Source of the DNA: Haplodiscus bocki | Lineage: Eukaryota | Assembly (NCBI GenBank): GCA_965655095.1 | Contig: OZ296648.1 | Span: forward strand, 73,470,001-73,534,000 | Direction of reading: 5' to 3' | Length of the DNA stretch: 64,000 nucleotides | In this document: in pieces, positions 33,701-64,000 of the stretch | How positions within the stretch are numbered: position 1 is the stretch's first letter | Layout of the letters: the number at the start of each line of letters is the position of its first letter | Notes under the pieces: generated by a model | What the model saw: the letters and a program-made list of their open reading frames with translations, nothing else | What the model was told of the DNA's origin: nothing | Database searches by the model: none | Position numbers and translations under genes: made by a program

Positions 33701-34157
33701 GACAACGCTGATTAGCGCTTCAGCGAATAAGTGAGACGGAAACATTTCATTAATGATTGAAATTAGCGGTATCATTTTATTAGCGGTTTTCTGGATCCTA
33801 TGAGTGCTAACAACGATGAAAATGGCAGCCGTCCGATTTCTCATTAAGTTTGGACATCAATTCCAACAAGAAACACAGTCGCACTGCGATATTTTTTGTC
33901 AAAGATGTGTAGAAATGAATGATTGAACATGTAACAAGTGGTTTTCGATAGAGACCTTGTCGGAGGAATTCAAGCCTCTATTTTCTTGTTTGATTCTTTA
34001 ATTTGTAAATATTTTCCGTCGAAAAAAATTTCGAAAGGAAAATATTCAATTCAGTAGTCGGTGTCTTTTTTCTATTTCTTGAAACTGCCCATGACGTGCA
34101 GACTTCGTGTCTGCAGAGTCGTTGGTGTCTTGCATAATACATTGTCGGATGTCGCCG

Positions 34158-34210
34158 CGGCTGCGAATCCGTAGGTTGAGTGTTTGAATCCCGCTGTCCA
34201 CCATATTTTT
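34158..34210 (+). other. tRNA-like 3' fragment (B-box-like, CCA, T-run)
   Basis: CGGCTGCGAATCCGTAGGTTGAGTGTTTGAATCCCGCTGTCCACCATATTTTTT; GTTTGAATCCC approximates GTTCGAATCCC. Confidence 0.35.
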
Positions 34211-34492
34211 TGCATATTTTTAGATACTCGTTAACACATTCTTATTTTATAAAAGCAAAAAGGATTTTTTTTCGACAAAATTTGGGGTTTTCAATAAAAG
34301 ACCTCCCCCCCCCCAAAAAAAAATAATTCGGTTTGCAACATAACTGCTGCTACAAATAGTTTTTCTCCAGAATTTTTTTCAAAAATATGGGAACTTTTTT
34401 TCGATTTTCCCAAAAATCCGAGAAAAGTTTAAAGTTGATAGATCTGTTGGAAAATTCAACTATAAATGTCAGTAATTGAATTTTTTTCAACT

Positions 34493-37400
34493 TTTTGATA
34501 TTAGTCTCTTTTTCCATTATCCGAGTTTCTCCGCGGCCAAAAATACTACTTTAGTTTGAAATTGCATCTGCTGGAACATATCGTTCTGTGATTCTCACAT
34601 TGAGGAAATGGGTAGAACCGTAACTAGTATTGAAATTCCTAGAATTTGCAACTTACTTTTCTCCGAAAAAACCAGGTTCAATTCTTCCATCTAGGTCTCA
34701 ATCGAAAGCGTTCTACTTGTACAAGCGTATGCCATATAAAAATCTTTGCTTTTCTTCCTTGCGTCAGAATCTTGATATACCGGTAATGCGAAAAAAGTGC
34801 CATTTTTTTTGAAAACCTCGGTTATCGAATATTTTATTTCTCCCTAAATACCTGCTCGGTTCAATCTATCAAAATTTCATTAGATAGCTTTCAACTTGTG
34901 CCAAATCATTCCCCAGAAAACTGTTGATTCGTTCCTTGAATCAGTAACTTGATAGTCCAAATATTCCCAAAAGTGATTATTTATTTTGATACATGGTCGC
35001 TTTTCGATCTCATGTTTCTTGGTAACTACAGATTCGATTTGGTACATGGAAGTCGCACTCGAGAACTGTACCTTGGTCGATGAGTATTCAATAGAAAAAT
35101 ATTTTCCTTTTGATCCTTGCATTGGAATCTTGATAGTCCGGAAATTCTAAAGAGTTCTATTAATATTGATACATTTCGATATACGAACTCCCGTTTGGCC
35201 ATAACTACAAGTTTGATTTTTTCCGTCGAGATCTCAATCAAGCATTTTAAACTGGTGGGGAGGATTAATCTCAGATATAAAATAATCCAAGCCTTGGTTC
35301 AGGCTTCTGATAGCCCGACGCTTCCAAAATAAGATAATAATCATGATTCATCCCGAGATGTAATATTTTTTCTTTATTTACAGGCCTGATTTGTTCCATC
35401 AAAGTCTCAATTAACAGCTGAAACCTTGTGAAGGAGTATTCTATTGATGAACAAGTCGTTTTGTTCCCTGATTCGGAACGCTGATTGTCCAGTAATTGCA
35501 AAAATTGCTGTTTTTATTGATATCTCCATATTCAAACTCATCTTTAAACGTGAGTAAAAGCATGATTTCTTCCACCATGGTCTCTATCTTAAACATCACA
35601 CTTGTCATGTCGGATTTGTTTGCTAAATCATTCACTCGGAGCCTCGATCCGAATCCTGATAGTCTGAAAATTGCAAAAAAAATTGTTTTGAATATTGACT
35701 CATGTTATTCAATTTCAATTTTCTTCGTAACTCTAAGTTTGATTTCTTCCATCGAGGTCTAAATCAAGCGCCTTGCACTTCTGGACGTTGATCGGGTGGA
35801 AAGGTTGTCCACTCTGACTCTTCCATCAAATCGTGATTGTCCGAAACTTCCAAAAAGTGCTTATAGTAACGAATTATCTTGATATTCTAACTCATATTTG
35901 TCTGTAACTACAGTTTGATATTAGTCTCTTTTTCCATTATCCGAGTTTCTCCGCGGCCAAAAAAACTATTTTAGTTTGAAATTGCATCTGCTGGAACATA
36001 TCGTTCTGTGATTCTCACATGGAGGAAATGCTTGGAACCGGAACTAGTTTTGAAATTCCTAGAAATTGCAACTTACTTTTCTCCGAAAAAACCAGCTTCA
36101 ATTCTTTCATGTAGGTCTCAATCGAAAGCCTTCTACTTGTACAAGCGTATGCCATATAAAAATCTTTGCTTTTCTTCCTTGCGTCAGAATCTTGATATAC
36201 CGGTAATGCGAAAAAAGTGCCATTTTTTTTGAAAACCTCGGTTATCGAATATTTTATTTCTCCCTAAATACCTGCTCGGTTCAATCTATCAAAATTTCAT
36301 TAGATAGCTTTCAACTTGTGCCAAATCATTCCCCAGAAAACTGTTGATTCGTTCCTTGAATCAGTAACTTGATAGTCCAAATATTCCCAAAAGTGATTAT
36401 TTATTTTGATACATGGTCGCTTTTCGATCTCATGTTTCTTGGTAACTACAGATTCGATTTGGTACATGGAAGTCGCACTCGAGAACTGTACCTTGGTAGA
36501 TGGGTATTCAATAGAAAAATATTTTCCTTTTGATCCTTGAATTGGAATCTTGATAGTCCGGAAATTCTAAAGAGTTCTATTAATATTGATACATTTCGAT
36601 ATACGAACTCCCGTTTGGCCATAACTACAAGTTTGATTTTTTCCGTCGAGATCTCAATCAAGCATTTTAAACTGGTGGGGAGGATTAATTTCAGATATAA
36701 AATAATCCAAGCCTTGGTTCAGGCTTCTGATAGCCCGACGCTTCCAAAATAAGATAATAATCATGATTCATCCCGAGATGTAATATTTTTTCTTTATTTA
36801 CAGGCCTGATTTGTTCCATCAAAGTCTCAATTAACAGCTGAAACCTTGTGAAGGAGTATTCTATTGATGAACAAGTCGTTTTGTTCCCTGATTCGGAACG
36901 CTGATTGTCCAGTAATTGCAAAAATTGCTGTTTTTATTGATATCTCCATATTCAAACTCATCTTTAAACGTGAGTAAAAGCATGATTTCTTCCACCATGG
37001 TCTCTATCTTAAACATCACACTTGTCATGTCGGATTTGTTTGCTAAATCATTCACTCGGAGCCTCGATCCGAATCCTGATAGTCTGAAAATTGCAAAAAA
37101 AATTGTTTTGAATATTGACTCATGTTATTCAATTTCAATTTTCTTCGTAACTCTAAGTTTGATTTCTTCCATCGAGGTCTAAATCAAGCGCCTTGCACTT
37201 CTGGACGTTGATCGGGTGGAAAGGTTGTCCACTCTGACTCTTCCATCAAATCGTGATTGTCCGAAACTTCCAAAAAGTGCTTATAGTAACGAATTATCTT
37301 GATATTCTAACTCATATTTGTCTGTAACTACAGTTTGATATTAGTCTCTTTTTCCATTATCCGAGTTTCTCCGCGGCCAAAAAAACTATTTTAGTTTGAA

Positions 37401-40400
37401 ATTGCATCTGCTGGAACATATCGTTCTGTGATTCTCACATGGAGGAAATGCTTGGAACCGGAACTAGTTTTGAAATTCCTAGAAATTGCAACTTACTTTT
37501 CTCCGAAAAAACCAGCTTCAATTCTTTCATGTAGGTCTCAATCGAAAGCCTTGTACTTGTACCAGCGTATGTCATATAAAAATCTTTGCTTTTCTTCCTT
37601 GCGTCCGAATCCTGATATACCGGTAATGCGAAAAAAGTGCCATTTTTTTTGAAAACCTCGGTTATCGATTATTTTATTTCTCCCTAAATACCTGCTCGGT
37701 TCAATCTATCAAAATTTCATTAGATAGCTTTCAACTTGTGCCAAATCATTCCCCAGAAAACTGTTGATTCGTTCCTTGCATCAGAAACTTGATAGTCCAA
37801 TCTTTCCCAAAAGTGTTCATTTATTTTGATACATGGTCGCTTTTCGATCTCATGTTTCTTGGTAACTACAGATTCGATTTGGTACATGGAAGTCGCATTC
37901 GAGAACTGTACCTTGGTAGATGAGTATTCAATAGAAAAATATTTTCCTTTTGATCCCTGCATTGGAATCTTGATAGTCCGGAAATTCTAAAGAGTTCTAT
38001 TAATATTGATTCATTTCGATATACGAACTCCCGTTTGGCCATAACTACGAGTTTGATTTTTTCCGTCGAGATCTCAATCAAGCATTTTAAACTGGTGGGG
38101 AGGATTAGTTTCAGATATAAAATAATCCAAGCCTTGGTTCAGGCTTCTGATAGTCCGAAGCTTCCAAAATAAGTTAATAATCTTGATTCATCCCGAGATA
38201 TAATATTTTTTTTATTTGCAGGCCTGATTTTTTCCATCAAAGTCTCAATGAACAGCTGAAACCCTGTGAAGGAGTATTCTATTGAAGAACAAGTCGTTCT
38301 GTTCCCTGATTCGGAACGCTGATTGTCCAGTAATTGCAAAACTTGCTGTTTTTATTGTTACATCTTCATATTCAAACTCATCTTTAAACGTGAGTAAAAG
38401 CTTGATTTCTTCCACCGTGGTCTCTATCTTAAACATGACACTTGTCATGTCGGATTTGTTTGCTAAATCATTCACTCGGAGCCTTGATCCGAATCCTGAT
38501 AGTCTGAAAATTGCAAAAAAAAATTGTTTTTAATATTGACTCATGTTATTCAAATTCAATTTTCTTCTTAACTTTAAGTTTGATTTCTTCCATCGAGGTC
38601 TAAATCAAGCGCCTTGCACTTCTGGAGGTTGATCCGGTTGAAAGGTTGTCCACTTTGACTTTTCCATCAAATCGTGATTGTCCGAAACTTCCAAAAAGTG
38701 CTTATAGTAACGAATTATCTTGATATTCTAACTCATATTTGTCTGTAACTACAGTTTGATATTAGTCTCTTTTTCCATTATCCGAGTTTCTCCGCGGCCA
38801 AAAAAATCTATTTTAGTTTGAAATTGCATCTGCTGGAACATATCGTTCTGTGATTCTCACATCGAGGAAATGCTTGGAACCGGAACTAGTTTTGAAATTC
38901 CTAGAAATTGCAACTTACTTTTCTCCGAAAAAACCAGGTTCAATTCTTTCATGTAGGTCTCAATCGAAAGCCTTCTACTTGTACAAGCGTATGCCATATA
39001 AAAATCTTTGCTTTTCTTCCTTGCGTCAGAATCTTGATATACCGGTAATGCGAAAACAGTGCCATTTTTTTTGAAAACCTCGGTTATCGAATATTTTATT
39101 TCTCCCTAAATACCTGCTCGGTTCAATCTATCAAAATTTCATTAGATAGCTTTCAACTTGTGCCAAATCATTCCCCAGAAAACTGTTGATTCGTTCCTTG
39201 AATCAGTAACTTGATAGTCCAAATTTTCCCAAAAGTGTATTTATTTTGATACATGGTCGCTTTTCGATCTCATGTTTCTTGGTAACTACAGATTCGATTT
39301 GGTACATGGAAGTCGCACTCGAGAACTGTACCTTGGCAGATGAGTATTCAATAGAAAAATATTTTCCGTTTGATCCTTGCATTGGAATCTTGATAGTCCG
39401 GAAATTCTAAAGAGTTCTATTAATATTGATACATTTCGATATACGAACTCCCGTTTGGCCATAACTACAAGTTTGATTTTTTCCGTCGAGATCTCAATCA
39501 AGCATTTTAAACTGGTGGGGAGGATTAATTTCAGATATAAAATAATCCAAGCCTTGGTTCACGCTTCTGATAGTCCGACGCTTCCAAAATAAGTTAATAA
39601 TCATGATTCATCCCGAGATGTAATATTTTTTCTTTATTTACAGGCCTGATTTGTTCCATCAAAGTCTCAATTAACAGCTGAAACCTTGTGAAGGAGTATT
39701 CTATTGAAGAACAAGTCGTTCTGTTCCCTGATTCGGAACGCTGATTGTTCAGTAGTTGCAAAACTTGCTGTTTTTATTGATACATCTCCATATTCAAACT
39801 CATCTTTAAACGTGAGTAAAAGCTTGATTTCTTCCACCATGGTCTCTATCTTAAACATGACACTTGTCATGTCGGATTTGTTTGTTAAATCATTCACTCG
39901 GAGCTTTGATCCGAATCCTGATAGTCTGAAAATTGCAAAAAAAAAATTGTTTTTAATATTGACTCATGTTATTCAAGTTCAATTTTCTTCTTAACTTTAA
40001 GTTTGATTTCTTCCATCGAGGTCTAAATCAAGCGCCTTGCACTTCTAGAGTTTAATCCGGTTGAAACCTTGTCCACTTTGACTCTTGCATCAAATCGTCA
40101 TTGTCCGAAACTTCCGAAAAGTGCTTATAATAACGAATTATCTTGCCATTCTAACTCATGTTTCTCTGTAACTAGTTTGATATTAGTCTCTTTTTGCATT
40201 ATCCGAGTTTTTCCGCGGCCAAAAAATACTATTTTAGTTTGAAATTGCATCTGCTGGAGCATATCCTTCTATGATTCTAACATTGAGGAAATGCTTAGAA
40301 GCGGAACTAGTATTGAAATTCCTAGAATTTGCAACTTACTTTTCTCCGAAAAAACCAGGTTCAATTCTTTCATCTAGGTCTCAATCGAAAGCCTTCTACC

Positions 40401-43400
40401 TGTACAAACGTATGCCATGTAAAAATCTTTGCTTTCTTCCTTGCGTCAGAATCCTGATATACCGGTAATGCGAAAAAAGTGCCATATTTTTTTGAAAACC
40501 TCGATTATCGAATGTTTTATTTCTCCCTAAATACCTCGGTTTGCTGTATCAAGTTTTCAATAGATAGCTTTCAAACTGTGCCAAATCATTCCCCAGGAAA
40601 CTGTTGATTCGTTCCTTGCATCAGAAACTTGATAGTCCAAATTTTCCCAAAAGTGTATTTATTTTGATACATCGTCGCTTTTCGATCTCATGTTTCTTGG
40701 TAACTACAGATTCGATTTGGTACATGGAAGTCGCACTGGAGAACTGTACCTTGGTAGATGAGTATTCAATAGAAAAATATTTTCCTTATGATCCTTGCAT
40801 GGGAATCTTGATAGTCCGGAAATTCTAAAGAGTTCTATTAATATTGATACATTTCGATATACGAACTCCCGTTTGGCCATAACTACAAGTTTGATTTTTT
40901 CCGTCGAGATCTCAATCAAGCATCTTAAACTGGTGGGGAGGATTGGTTTCAGATATAAAATAATCCAAGCCTTGGTTCAGGCTTCTTATAGTCCGAAGCT
41001 TCCAAAATAAGTTAATAATCATGTTTCATCCCGAGATGTAATATTTTTTCTTTATTTATAGTCCTGATTTGTTCCATCAAAGTCTCAATTGACAGCTGAA
41101 ACCTTGTGAAGGAGTATTCTATTGAAGAACAAGTCGTTCTGTTCCCTGATTCGGAACGCTGATTGTCCAGTAATTGCAAAACTTGCTGTTTTTATTGATA
41201 TATCTCCATATTCAAACTCATCTTTAAACGTGAGTAAAAGCTTGATTTCTTCCACCATGGTCTCTATCTTAAACATAACACTTGTCATGTCGGATTGCTT
41301 TGGTAAATCATTCACTCGGAGCTGTGATCCGAATCGTGATAGTCTGAAAATTGCAAACATAAATAATATTGACTTTGAAATAAAATAATAATGTTTTTAA
41401 TATTGACTCATGTTATTCAAATTCATTTTTCTTCGTAACTTTAAGTTTGATTTCTTCCATCGAGGTCTAAATCAAGCGCCTTGCACTTCTGGAGGTTGAT
41501 CCGGTTGAAAGATTGTCCACTTTGACTCTTGCATCAAATCGTCATTGTCCGAAACTTCCGAAAAGTGCTTATAATAACGAATTATCTTGCCATTCTAACT
41601 CATGTTTCTCTGTAACTAGTTTGATATTAGTCTCTTTTTGCATTATCCGAGTTTCTCCGCGGCCAAAAAATACTATTTTAGTTTGAAATTGCATCTGCTG
41701 GAACATATCCTTCTATGATTCTAACATTGAGGAAATGCTTAGAACCGGAACTAGTATTGAAATTCCTAGAATTTGCAACTTACATTTCTCCGAAAAAACC
41801 AGGTTCAATTCTTTCATCTAGGTCTCAATCGAAAGCCTTCTACCTGTACAAACGTATGCCATGTAAAAATCTTTGCTTTCTTCCTTGCGTCAGAATCCTG
41901 ATATACCGGTAATGCGAAAAAAGTGCCATATTTTTTTGAAAACCTCGATTATCGATTGTTTTATTTCTCCCTAAATACCTACTCGGTTTGCTGTATCAAG
42001 TTTTCAATAGATAGCTTTCAACTTGTGCCAAATCATTCCCCAGGAAACTGTTGATTCGTTCCTTGCATCAGAAACTTGATAGTCCAAATTTTCCCAAAAG
42101 TGTATTTATTTTGATACATCGTCGCTTTTCGATCTCATGTTTCTTGGTAACTACAGATTCGATTTGGTACATGGAAGTCGCACTGGAGAACTGTACCTTG
42201 GTAGATGAGTATTCAATAGAAAAATATTTTCCTTTTGATCCTTGCATGGGAATCTTGATAGTCCGGAAATTCTAAAGAGTTCTATTAATATTGATACATT
42301 TCGATATACGAACTCCCGTTTGGCCATAACTACAAGTTTGATTTTTTCCGTCGAGATCTCAATCAAGCATTTTAAACTGGTGGGGAGGATTGGTTTCAGA
42401 TATAAAATAATCCAAGCCTTGGTTCAGGCTTCTTATAGTCCGAAGCTTCCAAAATAAGTTAATTATCATGATTCATCCCGAGATGTAATATTTTTTCTTT
42501 ATTTATAGTCCTGATTTGTTGCATCAAAGTCTCAATTAACAGCTGAAACCTTGTGAAGGAGTATTCTATTGAAGAACAAGTCGTTCTCTTCCCTGATTCG
42601 GAACGCTGATTGTCCAGTAATTGCAAAACTTGCTGTTTTTATTGATATATCTCCATATTCAAACTCATCTTTAAACGTGAGTAAAAGCTTGATTTCTTCC
42701 ACCATGGTCTCTATCTTAAACATAACACTTGTCATGTCGGATTGCTTTGGTAAATCATTCACTCGGAGCTGTGATCCGAATCGTGATAGTCTGAAAATTG
42801 CAAACATAAATAATATTGACTTTGAAATAAAATAATAATGTTTTTAATATTGACTCATGTTATTCAAATTCATTTTTCTTCGTAACTTTAAGTTTGATTT
42901 CTTCCATCGAGGTCTAAATCAAGCGCCTTGCACTTCTGGAGGTTGATCCGGTTGAAAGATTGTCCACTTTGACTCTTGCATCAAATCGTCATTGTCCGAA
43001 ACTTCCGAAAAGTGCTTATAATAACGAATTATCTTGCCATTCTAACTCATGTTTCTCTGTAACTAGTTTGATATTAGTCTCTTTTTGCATTATCCGAGTT
43101 TCTCCGCGGCCAAAAAATACTATTTTAGTTTGAAATTGCATCTGCTGGAACATATCCTTCTATGATTCTAACATTGAGGAAATGCTTAGAACCGCAACTA
43201 GTATTGAAATTCCTAGAATTTGCAACTTACATTTCTCCGAAAAAACCAGGTTCAATTCTTTCATCTAGGTCTCAATCGAAAGCCTTCTACCTGTACAAAC
43301 GTATGCCATGTAAAAATCTTTGCTTTCTTCCTTGCGTCGGAATCCTGATATACCGGTAATGCGAAAAAAGTGCCATATTTTTTTGAAAACCTCGATTATC

Positions 43401-46400
43401 GATTGTTTTATTTCTCCCTAAATACCTACTCGGTTTGCTGTATCAAGTTTTCAATAGATAGCTTTCAACTTGTGCCAAATCATTCCCCAGGAAACTGTTG
43501 ATTCGTTCCTTGCATCAGAAACTTGATAGTCCAAATTTTCCCAAAAGTGTATTTATTTTGATACATCGTCGCTTTTCGATCTCATGTTTCTTGGTAACTA
43601 CAGATTCGATTTGGTACATGGAAGTCGCACTGGAGAACTGTACCTTGGTAGATGAGTATTCAATAGAAAAATATTTTCCTTTTGATCCTTGCATGGGAAT
43701 CTTGATAGTCCGGAAATTCTAAAGAGTTCTATTAATATTGATACATTTCGATATACGAACTCCCGTTTGGCCATAACTACAAGTTTGATTTTTTCCGTCG
43801 AGATCTCAATCAAGCATTTTAAACTGGTGGGGAGGATTGGTTTCAGATATAAAATAATCCAAGCCTTGGTTCAGGCTTTTTATAGTCCGAAGCTTCCAAA
43901 ATAAGTTAATAATCATGATTCATCCCGAGATGTAATATTTTTTCTTTATTTATAGTCCTGATTTGTTCCATCAAAGTCTCAATTAACAGCTGAAACCTTG
44001 TGAAGGAGTATTCTATTGAAGAACAAGTCGTTCTGTTCCCTGATTCGGAACGCTGATTGTCCAGTAATTGCAAAACTTGCTGTTTTTATTGATATATCTC
44101 CATATTCAAACTCATCTTTAAACGTGAGTAAAAGCTTGATTTCTTCCACCATGATCTCTATCTTAAACATAACACTTGTCATGTCGGATTGCTTTGGTAA
44201 ATCATTCACTCGGAGCTGTGATCCGAATCGTGATAGTCTGAAAATTGCAAACATAAATAATATTGACTTTGAAATAAAATAATAATGTTTTTAATATTGA
44301 CTCATGTTATTCAAATTCATTTTTCTTCGTAACTTTAAGTTTGATTTCTTCCATCGAGGTCTAAATCAAGCGCCTTGCACTTCTGGAGGTTGATCCGGTC
44401 GAAAAATTGTCCACATTGTGTCTTCCATCAAATCGTGATTGTCCGAAACTTCCAAAAAGTGCTTATAGTAACGAATTATCTTGATATTCTAACTCATGTT
44501 TCTCTGTAACTAGTTTGATATTAGTCTCTTCTTGCATTATCCGAGTTTCTCCGCGGCCAAAAAATACTTTTTTAGTTTGAAATTGCATCTGCTGGAACAT
44601 ATCGTTCTATGATTCTTATATGAGGAAATGCTTAGAACCGGAACTAGTATTGAAATTCCTGGAATTTGCAACTTACTTTTCTCCGAAAAAACCAGGTTCA
44701 ATTCTTTCATCTAGTTCTCAATCGAAAGCCTTCTACCTGTACAAGCGTATGCCATGTAAAAATCTTTGCTTTCTTCCTTGCGTCAGAATCCTGATATACC
44801 GGTAATGCGAAAAAAGTGCCATTTTTTTTTGAAAACCTCGGTTATCGAATATTTTATTTCTCCCTAAATACCTGCTCGGTTCAATCTATCAAAATTTTAA
44901 TAGATAGCTTTCAACTTGTGCCAAATCATTCCCCAGAAAACTGTTGATTCGTTCCTTGCATCAGAAACTTGATAGTCCAAATATTCCCAAAAGTGATTAT
45001 TTATTTTGATACATGGTCGCTTTTCGATCTAATGTTTCTTGGTAACTACAGATTCGATTTGGTACATGGAAGTCGCACTCGAGAACTGTACCTTGGTAGA
45101 TGAGTATTCAATAGAAAAATATTTTCCTTTTGATCCTTGCATTGGAATCTTGATAGTCCGGAAATTCTAAAGAGTTCTATTAATATTGATACATTTCGAT
45201 ATACGAACTCCCGTTTGGCCATAACTACAAGTTTGATTTTTTCCGTCGAGATCTCAATCAAGCATTTTAAACTGGTGGGGAGGATTGGTTTCAGATATAA
45301 AATAATCCAAGCCTTGGTTCAGGCTTCTTATAGTCCGAAGCTTCCAAAATAAGTTAATAATCATGATTCATCCCGAGATGTAATATTTTTTCTTTATTTA
45401 TAGTCCTGATTTGTTCCATCAAAGTCTCAATTAACAGCTGAAACCTTGTGAAGGAGTATTCTATTGAAGAACAAGTGGTTCTGTTCCCTGATTCGGAACG
45501 CTGATTGTCCAGTAATTGCAAAACTTGCTGTTTTTATTGATATATCTCCATATTCAAACTCATCTTTAAACTGAGTAAAAGCTTGATTTCTTCCACCATG
45601 GTCTCTATCTTAAACATCACACTTGTCATGTCGGATTGGTTTGGTAAATCATTCACTCGGAGCTTTGATCCGAATCGTGATAGTCTGAAAATTGCAAACA
45701 TAAATAATATTGACTTTGAAATAAAATAATAATGTTTTTAATATTGACTCATGTTATTCAAATTCATTTTTCTTCGTAACTTTAAGTTTGATTTCTTCCG
45801 TCGAGGTCTAAATCAAGCGCCTTGCACTTCTAGAGTTTGATCCGGTTGAAAGGTTGTCCACTTTGACTCTTGCATCAAATCGTCATTGTCCGAAACTTCC
45901 GAAAAGTGCTTCTAATAACGAATTATCTTGCCATTCTAACTCATGTTTCTCTGTAATTAGTTTGATATTAGTCTCTTTTTGCATTATCCGAGTTTCTCCG
46001 CGGCCAAAGAATACTATTTTACTTTGAAATTGCATCTGCTGGAACATATCGTTCTATGATTCTAACATTGAGGAAATGCTTAGAACCGGAACTAGTATTG
46101 AAATTCCTAGAATTTGCAACTTACTTTTCTCCGAAAAAACCAGGTTCAATTCTTCCATCTAGGTCTCAATCGAAAGCCTTCTACTTGTACAAGCGTATGC
46201 TATATAAAAATCTTTGCTTCTCCTCCTTGCGTCAGAATCCTGATATACCGGTAATGCGAAAAAAGTGCCATATTTTTTTGAAAACCTCGATTATCGAATG
46301 TTTTATTTCTCCCTAAATACCTACTCGGTTCGATGTATCAAGTTTTCAATAGATAGCTTTCAACTTGTGCCAAATCATTCTCCAGGAAACTGTTGATTCG

Positions 46401-52400: not shown

Positions 52401-55400
52401 TCCCGTTTGGCCATAGCTACAAGTTTGATTTTTTCCTTCGAGATCTCAATCGAGCATTTTACACTGGTGGGGCGGATTAGTTTCGGAAATAAAATAATCC
52501 AAGCCTTGGTTCAGGCTTCTTATAGTCCGAAGCTTCCAAAATAAGTTATTAATCATGATTCATCCCGAGATGTAATTTTTTTTCTCTATTTACAGGCTTG
52601 ATTTGTTCCATCAAAGTCTCAATTAACAGCTGAAACCTTGTAAAGGAGTATTCTGTTGAAAAACAAGTCGTTTTGTTCCCTGATTCGGAACGCTGATTGT
52701 CCAGTAATTGCAAAACTTGCTGTTTTTATTGATATATCTCCATATTCAAACTCATCTTTAAACGTGAGTAAAAGCTTGATTGCTTCCACCATGGTCTCTA
52801 TCTTAAACATCACTTTTGTCATGTCGGATTTGTTTGCTAAATCATTCACTCGGAGACTTGATCCGAATCCTGATAGTCTGAAAATTGCAAAAAAAAATTG
52901 TTTTCAATATTGACTCATGTTATTCAAAGTCAATTTTCTTCGTAACTTTTGTTTTGATTTCTTCCATCGAGGTCTAAATCAAGCGCCTTGCACTTGTGGA
53001 GGTTGATCCGGTTGAAAGATTGTCCACTTTGACTCTTGCATCAAATCGTGATTGTCCGAAACTTCCAAAAAATGCTTATAGTAACGAATTATCTTGATAT
53101 TCTAACTCATGTTTCTCTGTATTTACAGTTCGATATTGGTCTCTTTTTCCATTATCCGAGTTTCTCCGCGGCCAGAAAATGCTATTTTAGTTTGAAATTG
53201 CATCTGCTGCAAAATATCGTTCTGTGATTCTCACATTGAGGAAATGCTTACAACCGGAATTAGTATTGAAATTCAAAGAATTTGCAACTTACTTTTCTCC
53301 GAAAAAACCAGGTTCCATGCTTTCATCTAGGTCTCAATCGAAAGCCTTCTACTTGTACAAGCGTATGCCATATAATAATCTTTGCTTTTCTTCCTTGCGT
53401 CAGAATCCTGATACACCGGTGATGCGAAAATAGTGCCATATTTTTTTGAAAACCTCGATTATCGAATTATTTATTTCTCCCTAAATACCTACTCGGTTCG
53501 GTCTGTCAAGTTTTCAATAGATAGCTTTCAACTTGTGCCAAATAGTTCCCCAGGAAACTGTTGATTCGTTCCTTGCATCAGAAACTTGATAGTCCAAATT
53601 TTCCCAAAAGTGTTCATTTATTTTGATACATTGTCGCTTTTCGATCTCGTGTCTCTTGGTAACTACAGATTCGATTTGGTACATGGAAGTCGCACTCGAG
53701 AACTGTACCTTGGTAGATGAGTATGCAATAGAAAAATGTTTTCCTTTTGATCCTTGCATTGGAATCTTGATAGTCCGGAAATTCTAAAGAGTTCTTTTAA
53801 TATTGATACATTTCGATATTCGAACTCCCGTTTGGCCATAGCTACAAGTTTGATTTTTTCCTTCGAGATCTCAATCGAGCATTTTACACTGGTGGGGCGG
53901 ATTAGTTTCGGAAATAAAATAATCCAAGCCTTGGTTCAGGCTTCTTATAGTCCGAAGCTTCCAAAATAAGTTATTAATCATGATTCATCCCGAGATGTAA
54001 TTTTTTTTCTCTATTTACAGGCTTGATTAGTTCCATCAAAGTCTCAATTAACAGCTGAAACCTTGTAAAGGAGTATTCTGTTGAAAAACAAGTCGTTTTG
54101 TTCCCTGATTCGGAACGCTGATTGTCCAGTAATTGCAAAACTTGCTGTTTTTATTGATATATCTCCATATTCAAACTCATCTTTAAACGTGAGTAAAAGC
54201 TTGATTGCTTCCACCATGGTCTCTATCTTAAACATCACTTTTGTCATGTCGGATTTGTTTGCTAAATCATTCACTCGGAGACTTGATCCGAATCCTGATA
54301 GTCTGAAAATTGCAAAAAAAATTGTTTTCAATATTGACTCATGTTATTCAAAGTCAATTTTCTTCGTAACTTTTGTTTTGATTTCTTCCATCGAGGTCTA
54401 AATCAAGCGCCTTGCACTTGTGGAGGTTGATCCGGTTGAAAGATTGTCCACTTTGACTCTTGCATCAAATCGTGATTGTCCGAAACTTCCAAAAAATGCT
54501 TATAGTAACGAATTATCTTGATATTCTAACTCATGTTTCTCTGTATTTACAGTTCGATATTGGTCTCTTTTTCCATTATCCGAGTTTCTCCGCGGCCAGA
54601 AAATACTATTTTAGTTTGAAATTGCATCTGCTGCAAAATATCGTTCTGTGATTCTCACATTGAGGAAATGCTTACAACCGGAATTAGTATTGAAATTCAA
54701 AGAATTTGCAACTTACTTTTCTCCGAAAAAACCAGGTTCCATGCTTTCATCTAGGTCTCAATCGAAAGCCTTCTACTTGTACAAGCGTATGCTATATAAA
54801 AATCTTTGCTTCTCCTCCTTGCGTCAGAATCCTGATATACCGGTAATGCGAAAAAAGTGCCATATTTTTTTGAAAACCTCGATTATCGAATGTTTTATTT
54901 CTCCCTAAATACCTACTCGGTTCGATGTATCAAGTTTTCAATAGATAGCTTTCAACTTATGCCAAATCATTCCCCAGGAAACTGTTGATTCGTTCCTTGC
55001 ATCAGAAACTTGATAGTCCAAATTTTCCCAAAAGTGTATTTTCTTTGATACATGGTCGCTTTTCGATCTCATGTTTCTTGGTAACTACAGATTCGATTTG
55101 GTACTTGGAAGTCGCGCTAGAGAACTGTACCTCGGTAGATGAGTATTCAATAGAGAAATCTTTTCCTTTTGATCCTTGCATTGGAATCTTGATAGGGCGG
55201 AAATTCTAAAGAGTTCTTTAATATTGAAACATTTCGATATTCGAACTCCCGTTTGGCCATAGCTACAAGTTTGATTTTTTCCTTCGAGATCTCAATCGAG
55301 CATTTTACACTGGTGGGGCGGATTAGTATCAGAAATAAAATAATCCAAGCCTTGGTTCAGGCTTCTGATAGTCCGAAGCTTCCAAATTAAGTTAATAAAC

Positions 55401-58400
55401 ATGATTCATCCCGAGATATATATTTTTTGTCTATTTACAGGCTTGATTTGTTCCATCAAAGTCTCAATTAACAGCTGAAACCTTGTAAAGGAGTTTTCTG
55501 TTGAAAAACAAGTCGTTTTGTTCCCTGATTCGGAATGCTGATTGTCCAGTAATTGCAAAACTTGCTGTTTTTATTGATTTATCTCCATATTCAAACTCAT
55601 CTTTAAACGTGAGTAAAAGCTTGATTGCTTCCACCGTGGTCTCTGTCTTAAACATCACTTTTGTCATGTCGGTTTTGTTTGCTAAATCATTCACTCGGAG
55701 ACTTGATCCGAATCCTGATAGTCCGAAAATTGCAAAAAAAATTGTTTTCAATATTGACTCATGTTATTCAAAGTCAATACTCTTCGTAACTTTTGTTTTG
55801 ATTTCTTCCATCGAGGTCTAAATCAAGCGCCTTGCACTTGTGGAGGTTGATCCGGTTGAAAGATTGTCCACTTTGACTCTTGCATCAAATCGTGATTGTC
55901 CGAAACTTCCAAAAAATGCTTATAGTAACGAATTATCTTGATATTCTAACTCATGTTTCTCTGTATTTACAGTTCGATATTGGTCTCTTTTTCCATTATC
56001 CGAGTTTCTCCGCGGCCAGAAAATACTATTTTAGTTTGAAATTGCATCTGCTGCAAAATATCGTTCTGTTATTCTCACATTGAGGAAATGCTTACAACCG
56101 GAACTAGTATTGAAATTCAAAGAATTTGCAACTTACTTTTCTCCGAAAAAACCAGGTTCCATGCTTTCATCTAGGTCTCAATCGAAAGCCTTCTACTTGT
56201 ACAAGCGTATGCCATATAATAATCTTTGCTTTTCTTCCTTGCGTCAGAATCCTGATACACCGGTGATGCGAAAAAAGTGCCATATTTTTTTGAAAACCTC
56301 GATTATCGAATGTTTTATTTCTCCCTAAATACCTACTCGGTTCGATGTATCAAGTTTTCAATAGATAGCTATCAACTTGTGCCAAACAATTCCCCAGGAA
56401 ACTGTTGATTCGTTTTTCGCATCAGAAACTTGATAGTCCAAATTTTCCCAAAAGTGTTTATTTATTTTGATACATGGTCGCTTTTCGACCTCATGTTTCT
56501 TAGTAACTACAGATTCGATTTGGTACATGGAAGTCGCACTCGAGAACTGTACCTTGGTAGATGAGTATTCAATAGAAAAATATTTTCCGTTTGATCCTTG
56601 CATTGGAATCTTGATAGTCCGGAAATTCTAAAGAGTTCTATTAATATTGATACATTTCGATATACGAACTCCCGTTTGGCCATAACTACAGGTTTGATTT
56701 TTTCCGTCGAGATCTCAATCAAGCATTTTAAACTGGTGGGGCGGATTAATTTCAGATATAAAATAATCCAAGCCTTGGTTCAGGCTTCTGATAGTCCGAA
56801 GCTTCCAAATTAAGTTAATAAACATGATTCATCCCGAGATGTAATTTTTTTTTCTCTATTTACAGGCTTGATTTGTTCCATCAAAACCTCAATTAACAGC
56901 TGAAACCTTGTAAAGGAGTGTTCTGTTGAAAAACAAGTCGTTTTGTTCCCTGATTCGGAATGCTGATTGTCCAGTAATTGCAAAACTTGCTGTTTTTATT
57001 GATTTATCTCCATATTCAAACTCATCTTTAAACGTGAGTAAAAGCTTGATTGCTTCCACCATGGTCTCTGTCTTAAACATCACACTTGTCATGTCGAATT
57101 TGTTTGCTAAATCATTCACTCGGAGCCTTGATCCGAATCCTGATAGTCTGAAAATTGCAAAAAAAAATTTTTAATATTGACTCATGTTATTCAAAGTCAA
57201 TTTTCTTCGTAACTTTTAGTTTGATTTCTTCCATCGAGGTCTAAATCAAGCGCCTTGCACTTGTGGAGGTTGATCCGGTTGACCGATTGTCCACTTTGAC
57301 TCTTGCATCAAATCGTGATTGTCCGAATTTTCCAAAAAGTGCTTATAGTAACGAATTATCTTGATATTCTAACTCATGTTTCTCTGTGTTTACAGTTTGA
57401 TATTAGTCTCTTTTTCCATTATCCGAGTTTCTCCGCGGTCAAAAAATACTATTTCAGTTTGAAATTGCATCTGCTGGGAAATATCGTTCTGTGATTCTCA
57501 CATTGAGGAAATGCTTAGAACCGGAACTAGTATTGAAATTCAAAGAATTTGCAACTTACTTTTCTCCGAAAAAACCAGGTTCCATGCTTTCATCTAGGTC
57601 TCAATCGAAAGCCTTCTACTTGTACAAGCGTATGCCATATAATAATCTTTGCTTTTCTTCCTTGCGTCAGAATCCTGATACACCGGTGATGCGAAAAAAG
57701 TGCCATATTTTTTTGAAAACCTCGATTATCGAATGTTTTATTTCTCCCTAAATACCTACTCGGTTCGATGTATCAAGTTTTCAATAGATAGCTATCAACT
57801 TGTGCCAAACAATTCCCCAGGAAACTGTTGATTCGTTTTTCGCATCAGAAACTTGATAGTCCAAATTTTCCCAAAAGTGTTTATTTATTTTGATACATGG
57901 TCGCTTTTCGACCTCATGTTTCTTAGTAACTACAGATTCGATTTGGTACATGGAAGTCGCACTCGAGAACTGTACCTTGGTAGATGAGTATTCAATAGAA
58001 AAATATTTTCCGTTTGATCCTTGCATTGGAATCTTGATAGTCCGGAAATTCTAAAGAGTTCTATTAATATTGATACATTTCGATATACGAACTCCCGTTT
58101 GGCCATAACTACAAGTTTGATTTTTTCCGTCGAGATCTCAATCAAGCATTTTAAACTGGTGGGGCGGATTAATTTCAGATATAAAATAATCCAAGCCTTG
58201 GTTCAGGCTTCTGATAGTCCGAAGCTTCCAAATTAAGTTAATAAACATGATTCATCCCGAGATGTAATTTTTTTTTCTCTATTTACAGGCTTGATTTGTT
58301 CCATCAAAACCTCAATTAACAGCTGAAACCTTGTAAAGGAGTGTTCTGTTGAAAAACAAGTCGTTTTGTTCCCTGATTCGGAATGCTGATTGTCCAGTAA

Positions 58401-61400
58401 TTGCAAAACTTGCTGTTTTTATTGATTTATCTCCATATTCAAACTCATCTTTAAACGTGAGTAAAAGCTTGATTGCTTCCACCATGGTCTCTGTCTTAAA
58501 CATCACACTTGTCATGTCGAATTTGTTTGCTAAATCATTCACTCGGAGCCTTGATCCGAATCCTGATAGTCTGAAAATTGCAAAAAAAAATTGTTTTTAA
58601 TATTGACTCATGTTATTCAAAGTCAATTTTCTTCGTAACTTTTAGTTTGATTTCTTCCATCGAGGTCTAAATCAAGCGCCTTGCACTTGTGGAGGTTGAT
58701 CCGGTTGACCGATTGTCCACTTTGACTCTTGCATCAAATCGTGATTGTCCGAATTTTCCAAAAAGTGCTTATAGTAACGAATTATCTTGATATTCTAACT
58801 CATGTTTCTCTGTGTTTACAGTTTGATATTAGTCTCTTTTTCCATTATCCGAGTTTCTCCGCGGTCAAAAAATACTATTTCAGTTTGAAATTGCATCTGC
58901 TGGGAAATATCGTTCTGTGATTCTCACATTGAGGAAATGCTTAGAACCGGAACTAGTATTGAAATTCCTAGAATTTGCAACTTACTTTTCTCCGAAAAAA
59001 CCAGGTTCCGTTCTTTCATCTAGGTCTCAATCGAAAACCTTCTACTTGTACAAGCGTATGCCATATAAAAATCTTTGCTTTTCTTCCTTGCGTCAGAATC
59101 CTGATATACCGGTGATGCGAAAAAAGTGCCATATTTTTTTGAAAACCTCGATTATCGAATTATTTATTTCTCCCTAAATACCTACTCGGTTCGATCTATC
59201 AAGTTTTCAATAGATAGCTTTCAACTTGTGCTAAAAAATTCCCCAGGAAACTGTTTATTCGTTCCTTGCATCAGAAACTTGATAGTCCAAATTTTCCCAA
59301 AAGTGTTTATTTATTTTGATACATGGTCGCTTTTCGACCTCATGTTTCTTGGTAACTAAAGATTCGATTTGCTACATGGAAGTCGCACTCGAGAACTGTA
59401 CCTTGGTAGATGAGTATGCAATAGAAAAATGTTTTCCTTTTGATCCTTGCATTGGAATCTTGATTGTCCGGATATTCTAAAGAGTTCTATTAATATTGAT
59501 ACATTTCGATATTCGAACTCCCGTTTCGCCATAAATACAAGTTTGATTTTTCCGTCGGGATCTCAATCGAGCCTTTTACACTGGTGGGGGCGGATTAGTA
59601 TCAGAAATAAAATAATCCAAGCCTTGGTTCAGGCTTCTGATAGTCCGAAGCTTCCAAAATAAGTTAATAATCATGATTCATCCCTAGATGTAGTTTTTTT
59701 CTCTATTTACAGGCTTGATTTGTTCCATCAAAGTCTCAATTAACAGCTGAAACCTTGTAAAGGAGTATTCAGTTGAAAAACAAGTCGTTTTGTTCCCTGA
59801 TTCGGAACGCTGATTGTCCAGTAATTGCAAAACTTGCTGTTTTTATTGATATATCTCCATATTCAAACTCATCTTTAAACGTGAGTAAAAGCTTGATTTC
59901 TTCCACCATGGTCTCTATCTTAAATATCACACTTGTCATGTCGGATTTGTTTGCTAAATCATTCATTCGGAGCCTTGATCCGAATCCTCATAGTCTGAAA
60001 ATTGCAAAAACAAATTGTTTTTAATATTGACTCATCAAAGTCAATTTTCTTCGTTACTTTTAGTTTGATTTCTTCCATCGAGGTCTAAATCAAGCGCCTT
60101 GCACTTGTGGAGATTGATCCGGTTGAACGATTGTCCACTTTGACTCTTGCATCAAATCGTGATTGTCCGAAACTTCCAAAAAGTGCTTATAATAACGAAT
60201 TATCTTGATATTCCAACTCATATTTCTCTGTAACTGCAGTTTGATATTAGTCTCTTTTTCCATTATCCGAGTTTCTCCGCGGCCAAAAAATACTGTTTCA
60301 GTTTGAAATTGCATCTGCTGGAACATATCGTTCTGTGATTCTCACATTGAGGAAATGCTTAGAACCGGAACTAGTATTGAAATTCCTAGAATTTGCAACT
60401 TACTTTTCTCCGAAAAAAACAGGTTCCATTCTTTCATCTAGGTGTCAATCGAAAGCCTTCTACTTGTACAAGCGTATGCCATATAAAAATCTTTGCTTTT
60501 CTTCCTTGCGTCAGAATCCTGATATACCGGTGATGCGAAAAAAGTGCCATATTTTTTTGAAAACCTCGATTATCGAATATTTCATTTCTCCCTAAATACC
60601 TTCTCGGTTCGATTTATCAAGTTTTCAATAGATAGCTTTCAACTTGTGCCAATTCATTCCCCAGGAAACTGTTGATTCGTTCCTTGCATCAGAAACTTGA
60701 TAGTCCAAATTTTCCCAAAAGTGTTCATTTATTTTGATACATTGTCGCTTTTCGATCTCGTGTTTCTTGGTAACTACAGATTCGATTTGGTACATGGAAG
60801 TCGCACTCGAGAACTGTACCTTGGTAGATGAGTATTCAATATAAAAATGTTTTCCTTTTGATCCTTGCATTGGTATCTTGATAGTCCGGAATTTCTAAAG
60901 AGTTCTATTAATATTGATACATTTCGATATTCGAACTCCCGTTTGGCCATAACTACAAGTTTGATTTTTTCCCTCGAGATCTCAATCAAGCATTTTAAAC
61001 TGGTGGGGGCGGATTAGTATCAGAAATAAAATAATCCAAGCCTTGGTTCAGGCTTCTGATAGTCCGAAGCTTCCAAAATAAGTTAATAATCATGATTCAT
61101 CCCGAGATGTATTTTTTTTTGTCTATTTACAGGCTTGATTTGTTCCATCAAAGTCTCAATTAACAGCTGAAACCTTTTAAAGGAGAATTCTATTGAAGAA
61201 CAAGTCGTTTTAATCCCTGAATCGGAATGCTGATTGTCCAGTAATTTCAAAACTTGCTGTTTTTAATGATTTGTCTCCATATTCGAACTCATCTTTAAAC
61301 GTAAGTAAAAGCTAGATTGCTTCCACCATGGTCTCTTTCTTAAACATCACTTTTGTCATGTCGGATTTGTTTGCTAAATCATTCACTCGGAGCCTTGATC

Positions 61401-64000
61401 CGAATCCTGATAGTCTGAAAATTGCAAAAAAAAATTGTTTTCAATATTGACTCATGTTATTCAAATTCAAGTTTCTTCGTAACTTTAAGTTTGATTTCTT
61501 CCTTCGAGGTCTAAATCAAGCGCCTTGCACTTCTGGAGGTTGATCCGGTCGAAAAATTGTCCACATTGTGTCTTCCATCAAATCGTGATTGTCCGAAACT
61601 TCCAAAAAGTGCTTATAGTAACGAATTATCTTGATATTCTAACTCATTTTTGTCTGTAACTACAGTTTGATATTAGTCTCTTTTTCCATTATCCGAGTTT
61701 CTCCGCGGCCAAAAAATACTATTTTAGTTTCAAATTGCATCTGCCGGAACACATCGTTCTGTGATTCTCACATTGAGGAAATGCTTAGAACCGGAACTAG
61801 TTTTGAGTTTCCTAGATTTTGCAACTTACTTTTCTCCGAAAAAACCATGTTCAATTCTTTCATCTAGGTCTCAATCGAAAGCCTTCTACCTGTACAAGCG
61901 TATGCCATGTAAAAATCTTTGCTTTCTTCCTTGCGTCAGAATCCTGATATACCGGTAATGTGAAAAAAGTGCCATATTTTTTTTGAAAACCTCGATTATC
62001 GAATATTTTATTTCCCTAAATACCTGCTCGGTTCGATCTATCAAGTTTTCAATAGATAGCTTTCAACTTGTGCCAAATAGTTCCCCAGGAAACTGTTGAT
62101 TCGTTCCTTGCATCAGAAACTTGATAGTCCAAATTTTCCCAAAAGTGTTTATTTATTTTGATACATGGTCCCTTTTCGACCTCATGTTTCTTGGTAACTA
62201 CAGATTCGATTTGGTACATGGAAGTCGCACTCGAGAACTGTACCTTGGTAGATGAGTATGCAATAGAAAAATGTTTTCCTTTTGTTCCTTGCATTGGTAT
62301 CTTGATAGTCCGGAAATTCTAAAGAGTTCTATTAATTTTGATACATTTCGATATTCGAACTCACGTTTGGCCATAACTACAAGTTTGATTTTTTCCGTTG
62401 AGATCTCAATCGAGCATTTTACACTGGTGGGGCGGATTAGTTTCGGAAATAAAATAATCCAAGCCTTGGTTCAGGCTTTTGATAGTCCGAAGCTTCCAAA
62501 ATAAGTTATTAATCATGATTCATCCCGAGATGTAATTTTTTTTCTCTATTTACAGGCTTGATTTGTTCCATCAAAATCTCAATTAACAGCTGAAAACTTG
62601 TAAAGGAGTATTCTTTTGATGAACAAGTCGTTTTGTTCCCTGATTCGGAATGCTGATTGTCCAGTAATTTCAAAACTTGCTGTTTTTAATGATTTGTCTC
62701 CATATTCGAACTCATCTTTAAACGTAAGTAAAAGCTAGATTGCTTCCACCATGGTCTCTTTCTTAAACATCACTTTTGTCATGTCGGATTTGTTTGCTAA
62801 ATCATTCACTCGGAGCCTTGATCCGAATCCTGATAGTCTGAAAATTGCAAAAAAAAATTGTTTTCAATATTGACTCATGTTATTCAAATTCAAGTTTCTT
62901 CGTAACTTTAAGTTTGATTTCTTCCTTCGAGGTCTAAATCAAGCGCCTTGCACTTCTGGAGGTTGATCCGGTCGAAAAATTGTCCACATTGTGTCTTCCA
63001 TCAAATCGTGATTGTCCGAAACTTCCAAAAAGTGCTTATAGTAACGAATTATCTTGATATTCTAACTCATTTTTGTCTGTAACTACAGTTTGATATTAGT
63101 CTCTTTTTCCATTATCCGAGTTTCTCCGCGGCCAAAAAATACTATTTTAGTTTCAAATTGCATCTGCTGGAACACATCGTTCTGTGATTCTCACATTGAG
63201 GAAATGCTTAGAACCGGAACTAGTTTTGAGTTTCCTAGATTTTGCAACTTACTTTTCTCCGAAAAAACCATGTTCAATTCTTTCATCTAGGTCTCAATCG
63301 AAAGCCTTCTACCTGTACAAGCGTATGCCATGTAAAAATCTTTGCTTTCTTCCTTGCGTCAGAATCCTGATATACCGGTAATGTGAAAAAAGTGCCATAT
63401 TTTTTTGAAAACCTCGATTATCGAATATTTTATTTCCCTAAATACCTGCTCGGTTCGATCTATCAAGTTTTCAATAGCTTTCAACTTGTGCCAATTCATT
63501 CCCCAGTGAACTGTTGATTCGTTCCTTGCATCAGAAACTTGATAGTCCAAATTTTCCCAAAAGTGTTTATTTATTTTGATACATGGTCGCTTTTCGACCT
63601 CATGTTTCTTAGTAACTACAGATTCGATTTGGTACATGGAAGTCGCACTCGAGAACTGTACCTTGGTAGATGAGTATGCAATAGAAAAATGTTTTCCTTT
63701 TGTTCCTTGCATTGGTATCTTGATAGTCCGGAAATTCTAAAGAGTTCTATTAATTTTGATACATTTCGATATTCGAACTCACGTTTGGCCATAACTACAA
63801 GTTTGATTTTTTCCGTTGAGATCTCAATCGAGCATTTTACACTGGTGGGGCGGATTAGTTTCGGAAATAAAATAATCCAAGCCTTGGTTCAGGCTTTTGA
63901 TAGTCCGAAGCTTCCAAAATAAGTTATTAATCATGATTCATCCCGAGATGTAATTTTTTTTCTCTATTTACAGGCTTGATTTGTTCCATCAAAATCTCAA
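34493..64000. repeat. Satellite array: 20 complete + 1 partial units of ~1417-1450 bp, each an 8-mer HOR of a ~177-bp monomer
   Basis: Unit marker (TTTGATATTAGTCTC or variant) at about 34494, 35914, 37334, 38755, 40176, 41620, 43067, 44514, 45961, 47410, 48860, 50284, 51705, 53130, 54554, 55974, 57397, 58823, 60240, 61666 and 63089. Runs off the right edge. Confidence 0.98.

What the first reader, a model, noticed from the sequence alone, without database searches (positions are those of the whole stretch)
34493..64000. Hidden alpha-satellite-like architecture: the 1.42-kb unit is an octameric higher-order repeat of a ~177-bp monomer
Seen: two independent motif series recur inside one unit. 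Motif B (AGTTTGATTTCTTCCATCGAGGTCT-like) cores lie at 35036, 35215, 35388, 35564, 35741, 35917, 36099, 36278 and 36456, with spacings 179, 173, 176, 177, 176, 182, 179 and 178 that sum to 1420. Motif A (CTTGATAGTCC..AA.TT.C.AAA-like) lies at 34771, 34948, 35129, 35306, 35480, 35655, 35832 and 36191; the eighth copy is degenerate (gap 359, about 2x179). Monomers are strongly diverged from each other while HOR copies are highly similar. Established: this two-level organisation with nucleosome-sized monomers characterises primate alpha satellite (171 bp), and Arabidopsis CEN178 has a similar monomer length. Inference: candidate centromeric or pericentromeric HOR satellite in an invertebrate genome. 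I do not recognise the family.
Basis: partly seen in the sequence, partly recalled or inferred. Interest (0 to 1): 0.85.

Follow-up and report, generated by a model that had tools for sequence, protein, structure and literature searches.

The report
Eight-slot higher-order satellite repeat, coral
This stretch is non-coding satellite DNA whose 1.42-kb repeat is built from eight old, strongly diverged ~177-bp pieces, the layout known from human centromere DNA; it is a well-known kind of repeat, and nothing here shows that it acts as a centromere.

Summary
Observation confirmed, with one correction. From 34494 to the window end lies a head-to-tail array of 20.6 copies of a 1.42-kb unit (1418-1449 bp). 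Copies are 92-99% alike, and neighbours are the most alike.

Each unit has eight ~177-bp slots. Seven are demonstrably related monomers, 47-64% alike. Each is found by a model built from the other slots at 37-86 bits, against 7 bits or less for shuffles. The sixth slot (35917-36098, holding the SacII site) is monomer-like only in its last ~50 nt. Its middle resembles the flank just left of the array. All 159 monomers fall into eight positional clades.

I found no ORF, Pfam, Rfam or tRNA match, no Helitron-type hairpin and no CENP-B box.

A 1.4-kb contig from a Cyphastrea coral metagenome carries eight monomers of the same family in a three-monomer period. The family is therefore wider than this array, and the host is probably a stony coral.

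This is a regimented higher-order-repeat satellite, a known kind that a 2026 preprint calls common across eukaryotes. The scan has already reported similar ~172-175-bp arrays on two other pieces of this genome (s1-381257, s1-381258). A centromere role is untested, because no positional or CENP-A data were available.

The parts
34494..64000 (+). Tandem array of the 1.42-kb higher-order unit. It holds 3 slots (m6-m8), then 20 full eight-slot units, then about 2 slots, and is cut by the window end.
   Evidence: blastn of one unit against the window. TRF gives period 1420, 20.6 copies, 96%.
35036..36455 (+). Reference unit with eight slots: m1 35036-35214, m2 35215-35387, m3 35388-35563, m4 35564-35740, m5 35741-35916, m6 35917-36098, m7 36099-36277, m8 36278-36455.
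   Evidence: Alignment and identities, leave-one-out HMM, shuffle z-scores, eight positional clades.
35917..36098 (+). Odd slot m6 (182 bp, holds CCGCGG). It is not recognisable as a monomer except for its last ~50 nt.
   Evidence: 5 bits in leave-one-out, within the range of shuffles. z is -1 to 3.6. In-register local matches of positions 128-182 to m5 and m7. It sits on a long branch in the tree.
35113..35152 (+). It recurs at this position in the seven recognisable slots (m1-m5, m7, m8); slot m6 was left out of the alignment and lacks motif A.
   Evidence: Alignment of 7 window classes with 8 monomers of L005. Column-permutation test P = 0.0006.
41355..41381 (+). 27-nt insert in slot m4. 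It looks like a local imperfect duplication. It is present in six adjoining units only, starting at 41355, 42802, 44249, 45696, 47145 and 48595.
   Evidence: Unit alignment, exact positions, unit lengths of 1447-1449 for units 5-10.
34288..34417 (+). Flank stretch that resembles the middle of slot m6 (m6 positions 15-150), on the same strand and about 220 nt upstream of the first m6.
   Evidence: Local score 50 against 680 real-sequence control windows with mean 23.5 and maximum 42. blastn E 0.006, 64% over 75 nt. Contigs at 34261-34403 have single-copy depth.
33900..33985 (-). Inverted stretch that resembles a monomer junction plus motif B. It lies in a zone of very high contig depth.
   Evidence: blastn E 0.001 (87 nt, 65.5%) and E 0.003 (58 nt, 72%). 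nhmmer E 0.014.

Best explanation
This is a non-coding satellite array with a regimented higher-order repeat (HOR).

Likely history (inferred): an old tandem family of ~177-bp monomers diverged until neighbouring copies were only about half alike. A block of eight slots was then re-amplified as one 1.42-kb unit. It has since been kept similar by unequal exchange or gene conversion in the 1.42-kb register, acting mostly between nearby units.

Shown here: the two-level identity, the positional clades, the decay of identity with distance, and an indel that has spread to six adjoining units.

Inferred: the recombination mechanism itself. Also inferred is that the array acts, if at all, as packaged heterochromatin rather than through a product.

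The host is most likely a stony coral. The monomer family is larger than this array: a Cyphastrea-sample contig carries it in a different, three-monomer arrangement.

My odds for location: centromeric or pericentromeric about 0.25-0.3; other heterochromatin (interstitial or subtelomeric) for the rest.
For: - Units are 92-99% alike and monomers 47-64% alike.
- Seven slots are found by leave-one-out HMM at 37-86 bits, against 7 or less for shuffles.
- All 159 monomers fall into eight clades by position, 7 changes where shuffles need about 111.
- All 20 full units have the same eight slots.
- Identity falls from 97.1% at lag 1 to about 93% at lag 8 or more, in blocks.
- A 27-nt insert is shared by six adjoining units.
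- There is no ORF over 100 aa and no Pfam, Rfam or tRNA match.
- Independent short-read contigs of 4 runs (one study) hold the satellite in thousands of pieces. Most are 90-95% like this stretch, at summed depths far above the single-copy flank.
- L005, from the Cyphastrea sp. 2 metagenome, has eight monomers of the family in a period of three.
- A preprint on 325 species reports regimented HORs of 100-200-bp monomers as common in plants and animals (10.64898/2026.09.17.752431).
Against: - Slot 6 cannot be shown to be a monomer.
- The array's left edge falls on the m5|m6 boundary within about 3 nt. A pure unequal-exchange history does not predict this.
- There is no layer of diverged monomers at the left edge, only two weak relic-like matches.
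- Only one end of the array was seen.
- No variant units with a different whole number of monomers occur in the window.
Confidence: 0.85

Rival explanations
1. The array is the functional centromere satellite of its chromosome. On this reading the ~175-bp family carries CENP-A nucleosomes, each chromosome has its own HOR, and the conserved 40-nt block is a protein-binding box.
For: - The monomer is nucleosome-sized and the HOR is regimented.
- The family has different HORs in other places.
- One block of the monomer is conserved in both the window and L005.
- The window is gene-poor and repeat-rich.
- Satellite centromeres with HORs are frequent in animals.
Against: - No positional, CENP-A, FISH or Hi-C data are available.
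- There is no CENP-B box core, no 10-bp WW phasing and no strong dyad symmetry.
- Earlier scan notes list many other large satellites in this genome.
- By a rough reading of contig depth, copies at 90% likeness or more amount to only some hundreds of kb or less. The tool warns that this depth is no copy number.
Confidence: 0.25
2. The unit is a mobile-element derivative amplified in tandem, for example a Helitron-type element as at cnidarian subtelomeres. The seven monomers would be its internal repeats and slot 6 its fused ends.
For: - Helitron-derived tandem repeats fill the subtelomeres of Hydractinia, and similar sequences lie at Nematostella subtelomeres (PMC11934779).
- Slot 6 is unlike the other slots and the array begins exactly with it.
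- A high-copy dispersed sequence next to the array shares about 60-87 nt with the monomer.
- A first-stage note flags a possible Helitron in 1-11430 of this window.
Against: - No G+C-rich hairpin of 6 nt or more stands on either strand of the unit, so there is no hairpin-plus-CTRR end.
- There are no terminal inverted repeats and no coding remnant.
- Slot 6 has monomer length and a monomer-like tail in register.
- L005 has eight monomers in a row with no slot-6-like piece.
Confidence: 0.1
3. The 177-bp periodicity is a chance or compositional effect, or the array is an assembly artefact.
For: TRF does not report a 177-bp period. Monomer identity is low.
Against: The signal exceeds all shuffles within a single unit. 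Leave-one-out E-values reach 6e-26. An independent contig from another sample is detected by the same model. Contigs of independent runs hold the satellite.
Confidence: 0.02

Closest known systems
Primate alpha satellite higher-order repeats (171-bp monomer)
   Same: - Head-to-tail monomers of about nucleosome length.
- Monomers within a unit are far more diverged than units are from each other.
- Monomers group by position.
- The periodicity is strict, and homogenisation is local.
- Widely quoted figures for alpha satellite are 50-70% between monomers and 95-100% between units (my own knowledge). Here they are 47-64% and 92-99%.
   Different: - No sequence relation was tested or expected.
- There is no CENP-B box core.
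- One slot is unrecognisable.
- No diverged monomeric layer is seen at the one visible edge.
- Centromere function is unknown.
Regimented satellite HORs reported across plants and animals (bioRxiv 10.64898/2026.09.17.752431), including clustered satellite arrays in the cnidarian written there as Ricordia florida
   Same: Monomer in the 100-200-bp class, regimented HOR, higher similarity between nearby repeats.
   Different: That work defines HOR blocks from monomers at least 96% alike and places its arrays at inferred centromeres. Here the monomer layer is too diverged for TRF to detect, and the position is unknown. I could not compare sequences.
Arabidopsis CEN178
   Same: The monomer length is nearly the same (178 bp), and it is a tandem satellite with higher-order structure.
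   Different: CEN178 HORs are heterogeneous in spacing and its monomers are much more alike (my own knowledge). Here the period is strict and the monomers are about half alike.
Helitron-derived subtelomeric tandem repeats of cnidarians (Hydractinia 372-bp unit plus ~150-bp minisatellite; PMC11934779)
   Same: Large tandem arrays in a cnidarian genome with a minisatellite of similar size class.
   Different: No Helitron end features or coding remnants occur in this unit. No telomere repeat occurs in the window.
L005, contig Ga0126343_10199126 from the Cyphastrea sp. 2 metagenome
   Same: Same monomer family. Eight tandem ~175-bp monomers are detected by the window's model at 16-102 bits, and the conserved blocks are the same.
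   Different: Its monomers follow a period of three (73-77% within a class) and show no one-to-one match to m1-m8. Best identity to the window is about 70%.

Membership tests
Higher-order-repeat (HOR) satellite | Head-to-tail monomers of one length class that are demonstrably related | tested here: met
   Seven of eight slots are met: 37-86 bits in leave-one-out and z 4-18. Slot 6 is not shown to be related (5 bits).
Higher-order-repeat (HOR) satellite | Units much more alike than the monomers inside a unit | tested here: met
   92-99% between units against 47-64% between monomers.
Higher-order-repeat (HOR) satellite | Monomers group by position in the unit, not by neighbourhood | tested here: met
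   Eight groups, each one side of a branch with support 94-100.
Higher-order-repeat (HOR) satellite | Strict periodicity in whole monomers along the array | tested here: met
   20 of 20 full units have the same eight slots. 144 monomers are detected with 20 gaps of about 350-360 nt at slot 6.
Higher-order-repeat (HOR) satellite | Variant units that differ by whole monomers (register-shifted exchange) | tested here: inconclusive
   None occur in the window. A recurrent contig joint runs from the end of m3 to the start of m7 with 23 other letters between, but the contigs are short and may come from other arrays.
Functional centromeric satellite | Occupied by CENP-A/CenH3 nucleosomes | not testable with these tools
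   No chromatin data. No RNA or ChIP runs were offered.
Functional centromeric satellite | Lies at the primary constriction, one main array or cluster per chromosome | not testable with these tools
   The position of the window in its chromosome is unknown. Earlier notes place similar arrays on other pieces.
Primate alpha satellite (as a sequence family) | CENP-B box core (TTCG....A..CGGG) in a share of the monomers | tested here: not met
   0 matches in the window.
Helitron-derived tandem repeat | 3' G+C-rich hairpin followed by CTRR; rolling-circle gene remnants | tested here: not met
   No perfect G+C-rich stem of 6 nt or more on either strand. No Pfam match in the ORF pieces.
Tandem gene array (protein or RNA) | Conserved reading frame or a known RNA family in each unit | tested here: not met
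   Longest ORFs are under 100 aa and differ between units. Rfam and ARAGORN find nothing.

The most novel reading that the evidence does not exclude
The ~175-bp family is the centromere satellite of a stony coral, with a different higher-order repeat on each chromosome. Examples would be eight slots here, 8-17 on other pieces according to earlier notes, and a period of three in the Cyphastrea contig. The 40-nt block conserved across these lineages would be the docking site of a centromere protein. If so, this would to my knowledge be the first sequence-level description of scleractinian centromeres. It would also be an independent origin of the alpha-satellite-like system in an early-branching animal.
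Probability: 0.2. Interest if true: 0.6.

Novelty: new member of a known kind. Interest (0 to 1): 0.35.

Why it matters
If the family marks centromeres, it would give coral genomics a handle on chromosome architecture: FISH probes, assembly validation and karyotype evolution. It would also add an early-branching animal to the cases where regimented higher-order repeats arose independently.

As it stands it is a clean, well-supported example of a known satellite architecture. Its monomer layer is too diverged for standard tandem-repeat finders, so such arrays are likely to be annotated as 1.4-kb 'macrosatellites' and their monomer family missed.

The odd slot and its match to the flank may record how this unit was first assembled.

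Tried and rejected
- **Coding origin.** 177 = 59 codons, but slot lengths of 173-182 break any frame. No ORF reaches 100 aa, and there is no Pfam match at E up to 0.1 except one sub-threshold chance hit.
- **RNA genes.** Rfam at gathering thresholds and ARAGORN found nothing.
- **Helitron ends.** No hairpin was found. Inverted repeats in the unit are weak and A+T-rich.
- **Relation to the 175-bp x3 tandem repeat at 22475-22989.** No match to the monomer model.
- **Diverged monomeric layer left of the array.** None was found at E under 0.01.
- **Nucleosome-positioning signal.** WW power at 9.5-11 bp is no higher than in shuffles.
- **CpG decay.** CpG observed/expected is 1.0, and CpG sites are not more variable than others.
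- **A four-unit super-period suggested by the lag-5693 peak.** The identity matrix shows blocks, not a clean super-repeat.
- **Older three-monomer period inside the unit.** The identity matrix gives no such signal.
- **Metagenome scan.** 24 of the 25 loci were chance matches. One of them, L009, is a contig of a human-gut metagenome. It gave no match and I did not use it further. I take none of the contigs for human DNA.
- **Earlier findings by sequence.** Blank.
- **Papers on coral satellites with higher-order repeats or centromeres.** None was found in the held library.
- **Organism name.** The runs are coded.
Full report
**What is there.** TRF at default settings reports nothing between 34493 and 64000, because its period limit is 500. 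Base-by-base autocorrelation of that stretch shows strong peaks at 1420, 1423 and 1447. It also shows a separate peak at 178, 9.7 sd above background, with echoes near 357 and 536. blastn of one unit against the window places the array start at 34494. It lists 20 full copies plus partial ones at each end, all on the + strand. TRF with a period limit of 2000 gives period 1420, 20.6 copies and 96% matches over 34494-64000. Even at relaxed scoring it reports no 177-bp period. The window has no N.

**The 177-bp layer is real.**
- To avoid counting the same thing 20 times, I tested one unit alone. Circular autocorrelation peaks at 177, 358, 536 and 709. The 177 and 536 peaks exceed the highest value seen at any lag in 300 shuffles.
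- In a leave-one-out test, a profile built from seven slots finds the eighth at 37-86 bits (E 4e-11 to 6e-26) for m1-m5, m7 and m8. 500 shuffles of each slot never pass 7 bits.
- Pairwise global scores among these seven are 4-18 sd above dinucleotide shuffles.
CCGCGG occurs exactly once per unit.

**The correction: slot 6.** Slot m6 (35917-36098) scores 5 bits in leave-one-out, within the range of shuffles. Its z-scores are -1 to 3.6 against the other slots and 0 to 3 against the monomers of the outside relative. Only its last ~50 nt align, in register, with the tails of m5 and m7. The unit is therefore seven provable monomers plus one monomer-length slot that is either decayed beyond recognition or partly replaced.

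**Two levels.**
- Units are 92-99% alike. Monomers within a unit are 47-64% alike, and 34-41% for m6.
- A maximum-likelihood tree of all 159 monomers puts each of the eight positions on one side of a single branch, with support 94-100. That needs 7 changes, where shuffled labels need about 111.
- All 20 full units carry the same eight slots.
- Mean identity between units falls from 97.1% for neighbours to about 93% at eight or more units apart. The matrix shows blocks: units 1-3, 4-10, 11-15, 16-17 and 19-20.
- A 27-nt insert in m4, apparently a local imperfect duplication, is present in exactly six adjoining units.
- These are the expected marks of homogenisation by exchange between nearby units. 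The mechanism itself is inferred, not shown.

**What it is not.**
- No ORF in the array reaches 100 aa. ORF pieces give no Pfam match.
- Rfam and ARAGORN find nothing in the window.
- No G+C-rich hairpin stands on either strand of the unit, so there is no Helitron-type end. Inverted repeats are weak.
- There is no CENP-B box core and no 10-bp WW periodicity above shuffles.
- CpG is not depleted.

**Relatives and host.**
- A two-motif pattern taken from the monomer was scanned over the metagenome collection and returned 25 loci. The monomer profile shows that 24 are chance and one is real.
- The real one is L005, contig Ga0126343_10199126, 1413 nt. It carries eight tandem ~175-nt monomers at 16-102 bits.
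- A preprint names Ga0126343 as the metagenome of Cyphastrea sp. 2, a stony coral (10.1101/391565). This supports the earlier scan note that calls this genome a coral. I did not otherwise verify the organism, because the runs that hold the satellite are coded.
- L005's monomers follow a period of three, with classes k1/k4/k7, k2/k5/k8 and k3/k6 at 73-77%. They do not pair off with m1-m8. Best identity to the window is about 70%. The monomer family is thus older and wider than this eight-slot unit and forms different higher-order units in different places.
- Aligning the seven window classes with L005's eight monomers shows one 40-column block (monomer positions 78-117, around motif A) that is more conserved than column order would give by chance, P = 0.0006. 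This may reflect constraint, for example a binding site. That is a hypothesis only.

**Abundance.** Contigs of four public runs, all from one study, were laid on 33001-38000. They cover the satellite in thousands of short pieces. Most are 90-95% like this stretch, at summed depths tens of times that of the single-copy flank, which is about 26 in run X2. The tool warns that this is no copy number. I read it only as 'multi-copy, with many variants'. No holder is on record as RNA, so transcription is untested.

**The left edge.**
- The array begins at the m5|m6 boundary within about 3 nt. There is no layer of diverged monomers outside it.
- The middle of m6 (positions 15-150) has its best match in the whole 34.5-kb flank right beside the array, on the same strand, at 34288-34417. 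The local score is 50, against a maximum of 42 in 680 real-sequence control windows, and blastn gives E 0.006. Contigs there have single-copy depth.
- An inverted stretch at 33900-33985 resembles a monomer junction plus motif B, at E 0.001-0.014. It lies in a zone of very high contig depth, that is, a dispersed repeat.
- I cannot tell whether these are relics of an older array edge or whether slot 6 was captured from the flank when the unit was first formed. Either way the edge is not a simple arbitrary break, and this is the one feature that keeps a defined-end (element-like) origin alive.

**Comparison with what is known.**
- The layout meets the defining features of a higher-order-repeat satellite, as in primate alpha satellite. 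It is not a sequence relative of that family.
- A 2026 preprint on 325 species states that 100-200-bp satellites with regimented HORs are common across plants and animals. It includes a cnidarian with clustered arrays.
- In cnidarians, large tandem arrays can also be Helitron-derived and subtelomeric (PMC11934779). I found no support for that here.
- The library search found no paper on coral satellites with higher-order repeats.
- Earlier notes of this scan describe similar ~172-175-bp HOR satellites on two other pieces of the same genome (s1-381257, s1-381258). I could not compare sequences with them.

**Verdict.** The architecture claim is supported, with the caveat about slot 6. The centromere claim is open. 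It is a new member of a known kind and of moderate interest.

Noticed in passing
window 1-11288: A second, unrelated tandem array: about 3.8 copies of a ~3.0-kb unit, 88-96% alike. It contains 9-nt GCCAAAATG-type microsatellite runs at 5404-5724 and 8405-8725. The 165-aa ORF in it has no Pfam match. A first-stage note reads it as a possible Helitron capture.
   Followed up: partly
window 33836-34336: Zone of very high summed contig depth, up to about 1e5 against about 26 for single copy, with many loose ends at 34010-34142. It is a very abundant short dispersed element. 34150-34203 looks like a tRNA 3' part ending in CCA, but ARAGORN calls no tRNA.
   Followed up: partly
window 22475-22989: Three copies of a 175-nt tandem repeat, 93% alike. 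It has the same length class as the satellite monomer but does not match the monomer model.
   Followed up: yes
window 34494-64000: CpG observed/expected is 1.0, and CpG positions are not more variable between units than other positions (16% against 22%). There is no sign of methylation-driven decay in this satellite.
   Followed up: yes
window 34261-34403: Two contig forms at single-copy depth in each run, 143 nt with 0 differences and 134 nt with 5 differences and 9 gaps. They span the C-run/A-run at 34301-34325 and are probably two alleles.
   Followed up: no
window 35545/36965 to 34684: A recurrent contig joint seen in all four runs links the end of an m3-like monomer to the start of an m7-like one, with 23 other letters between that resemble a monomer tail. 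It is probably a related array with a different slot order elsewhere in the genome.
   Followed up: no
window 11778-17109: A cluster of short minisatellites with periods of 21-75 nt. It adds to the repeat-rich, gene-poor character of the flank.
   Followed up: no
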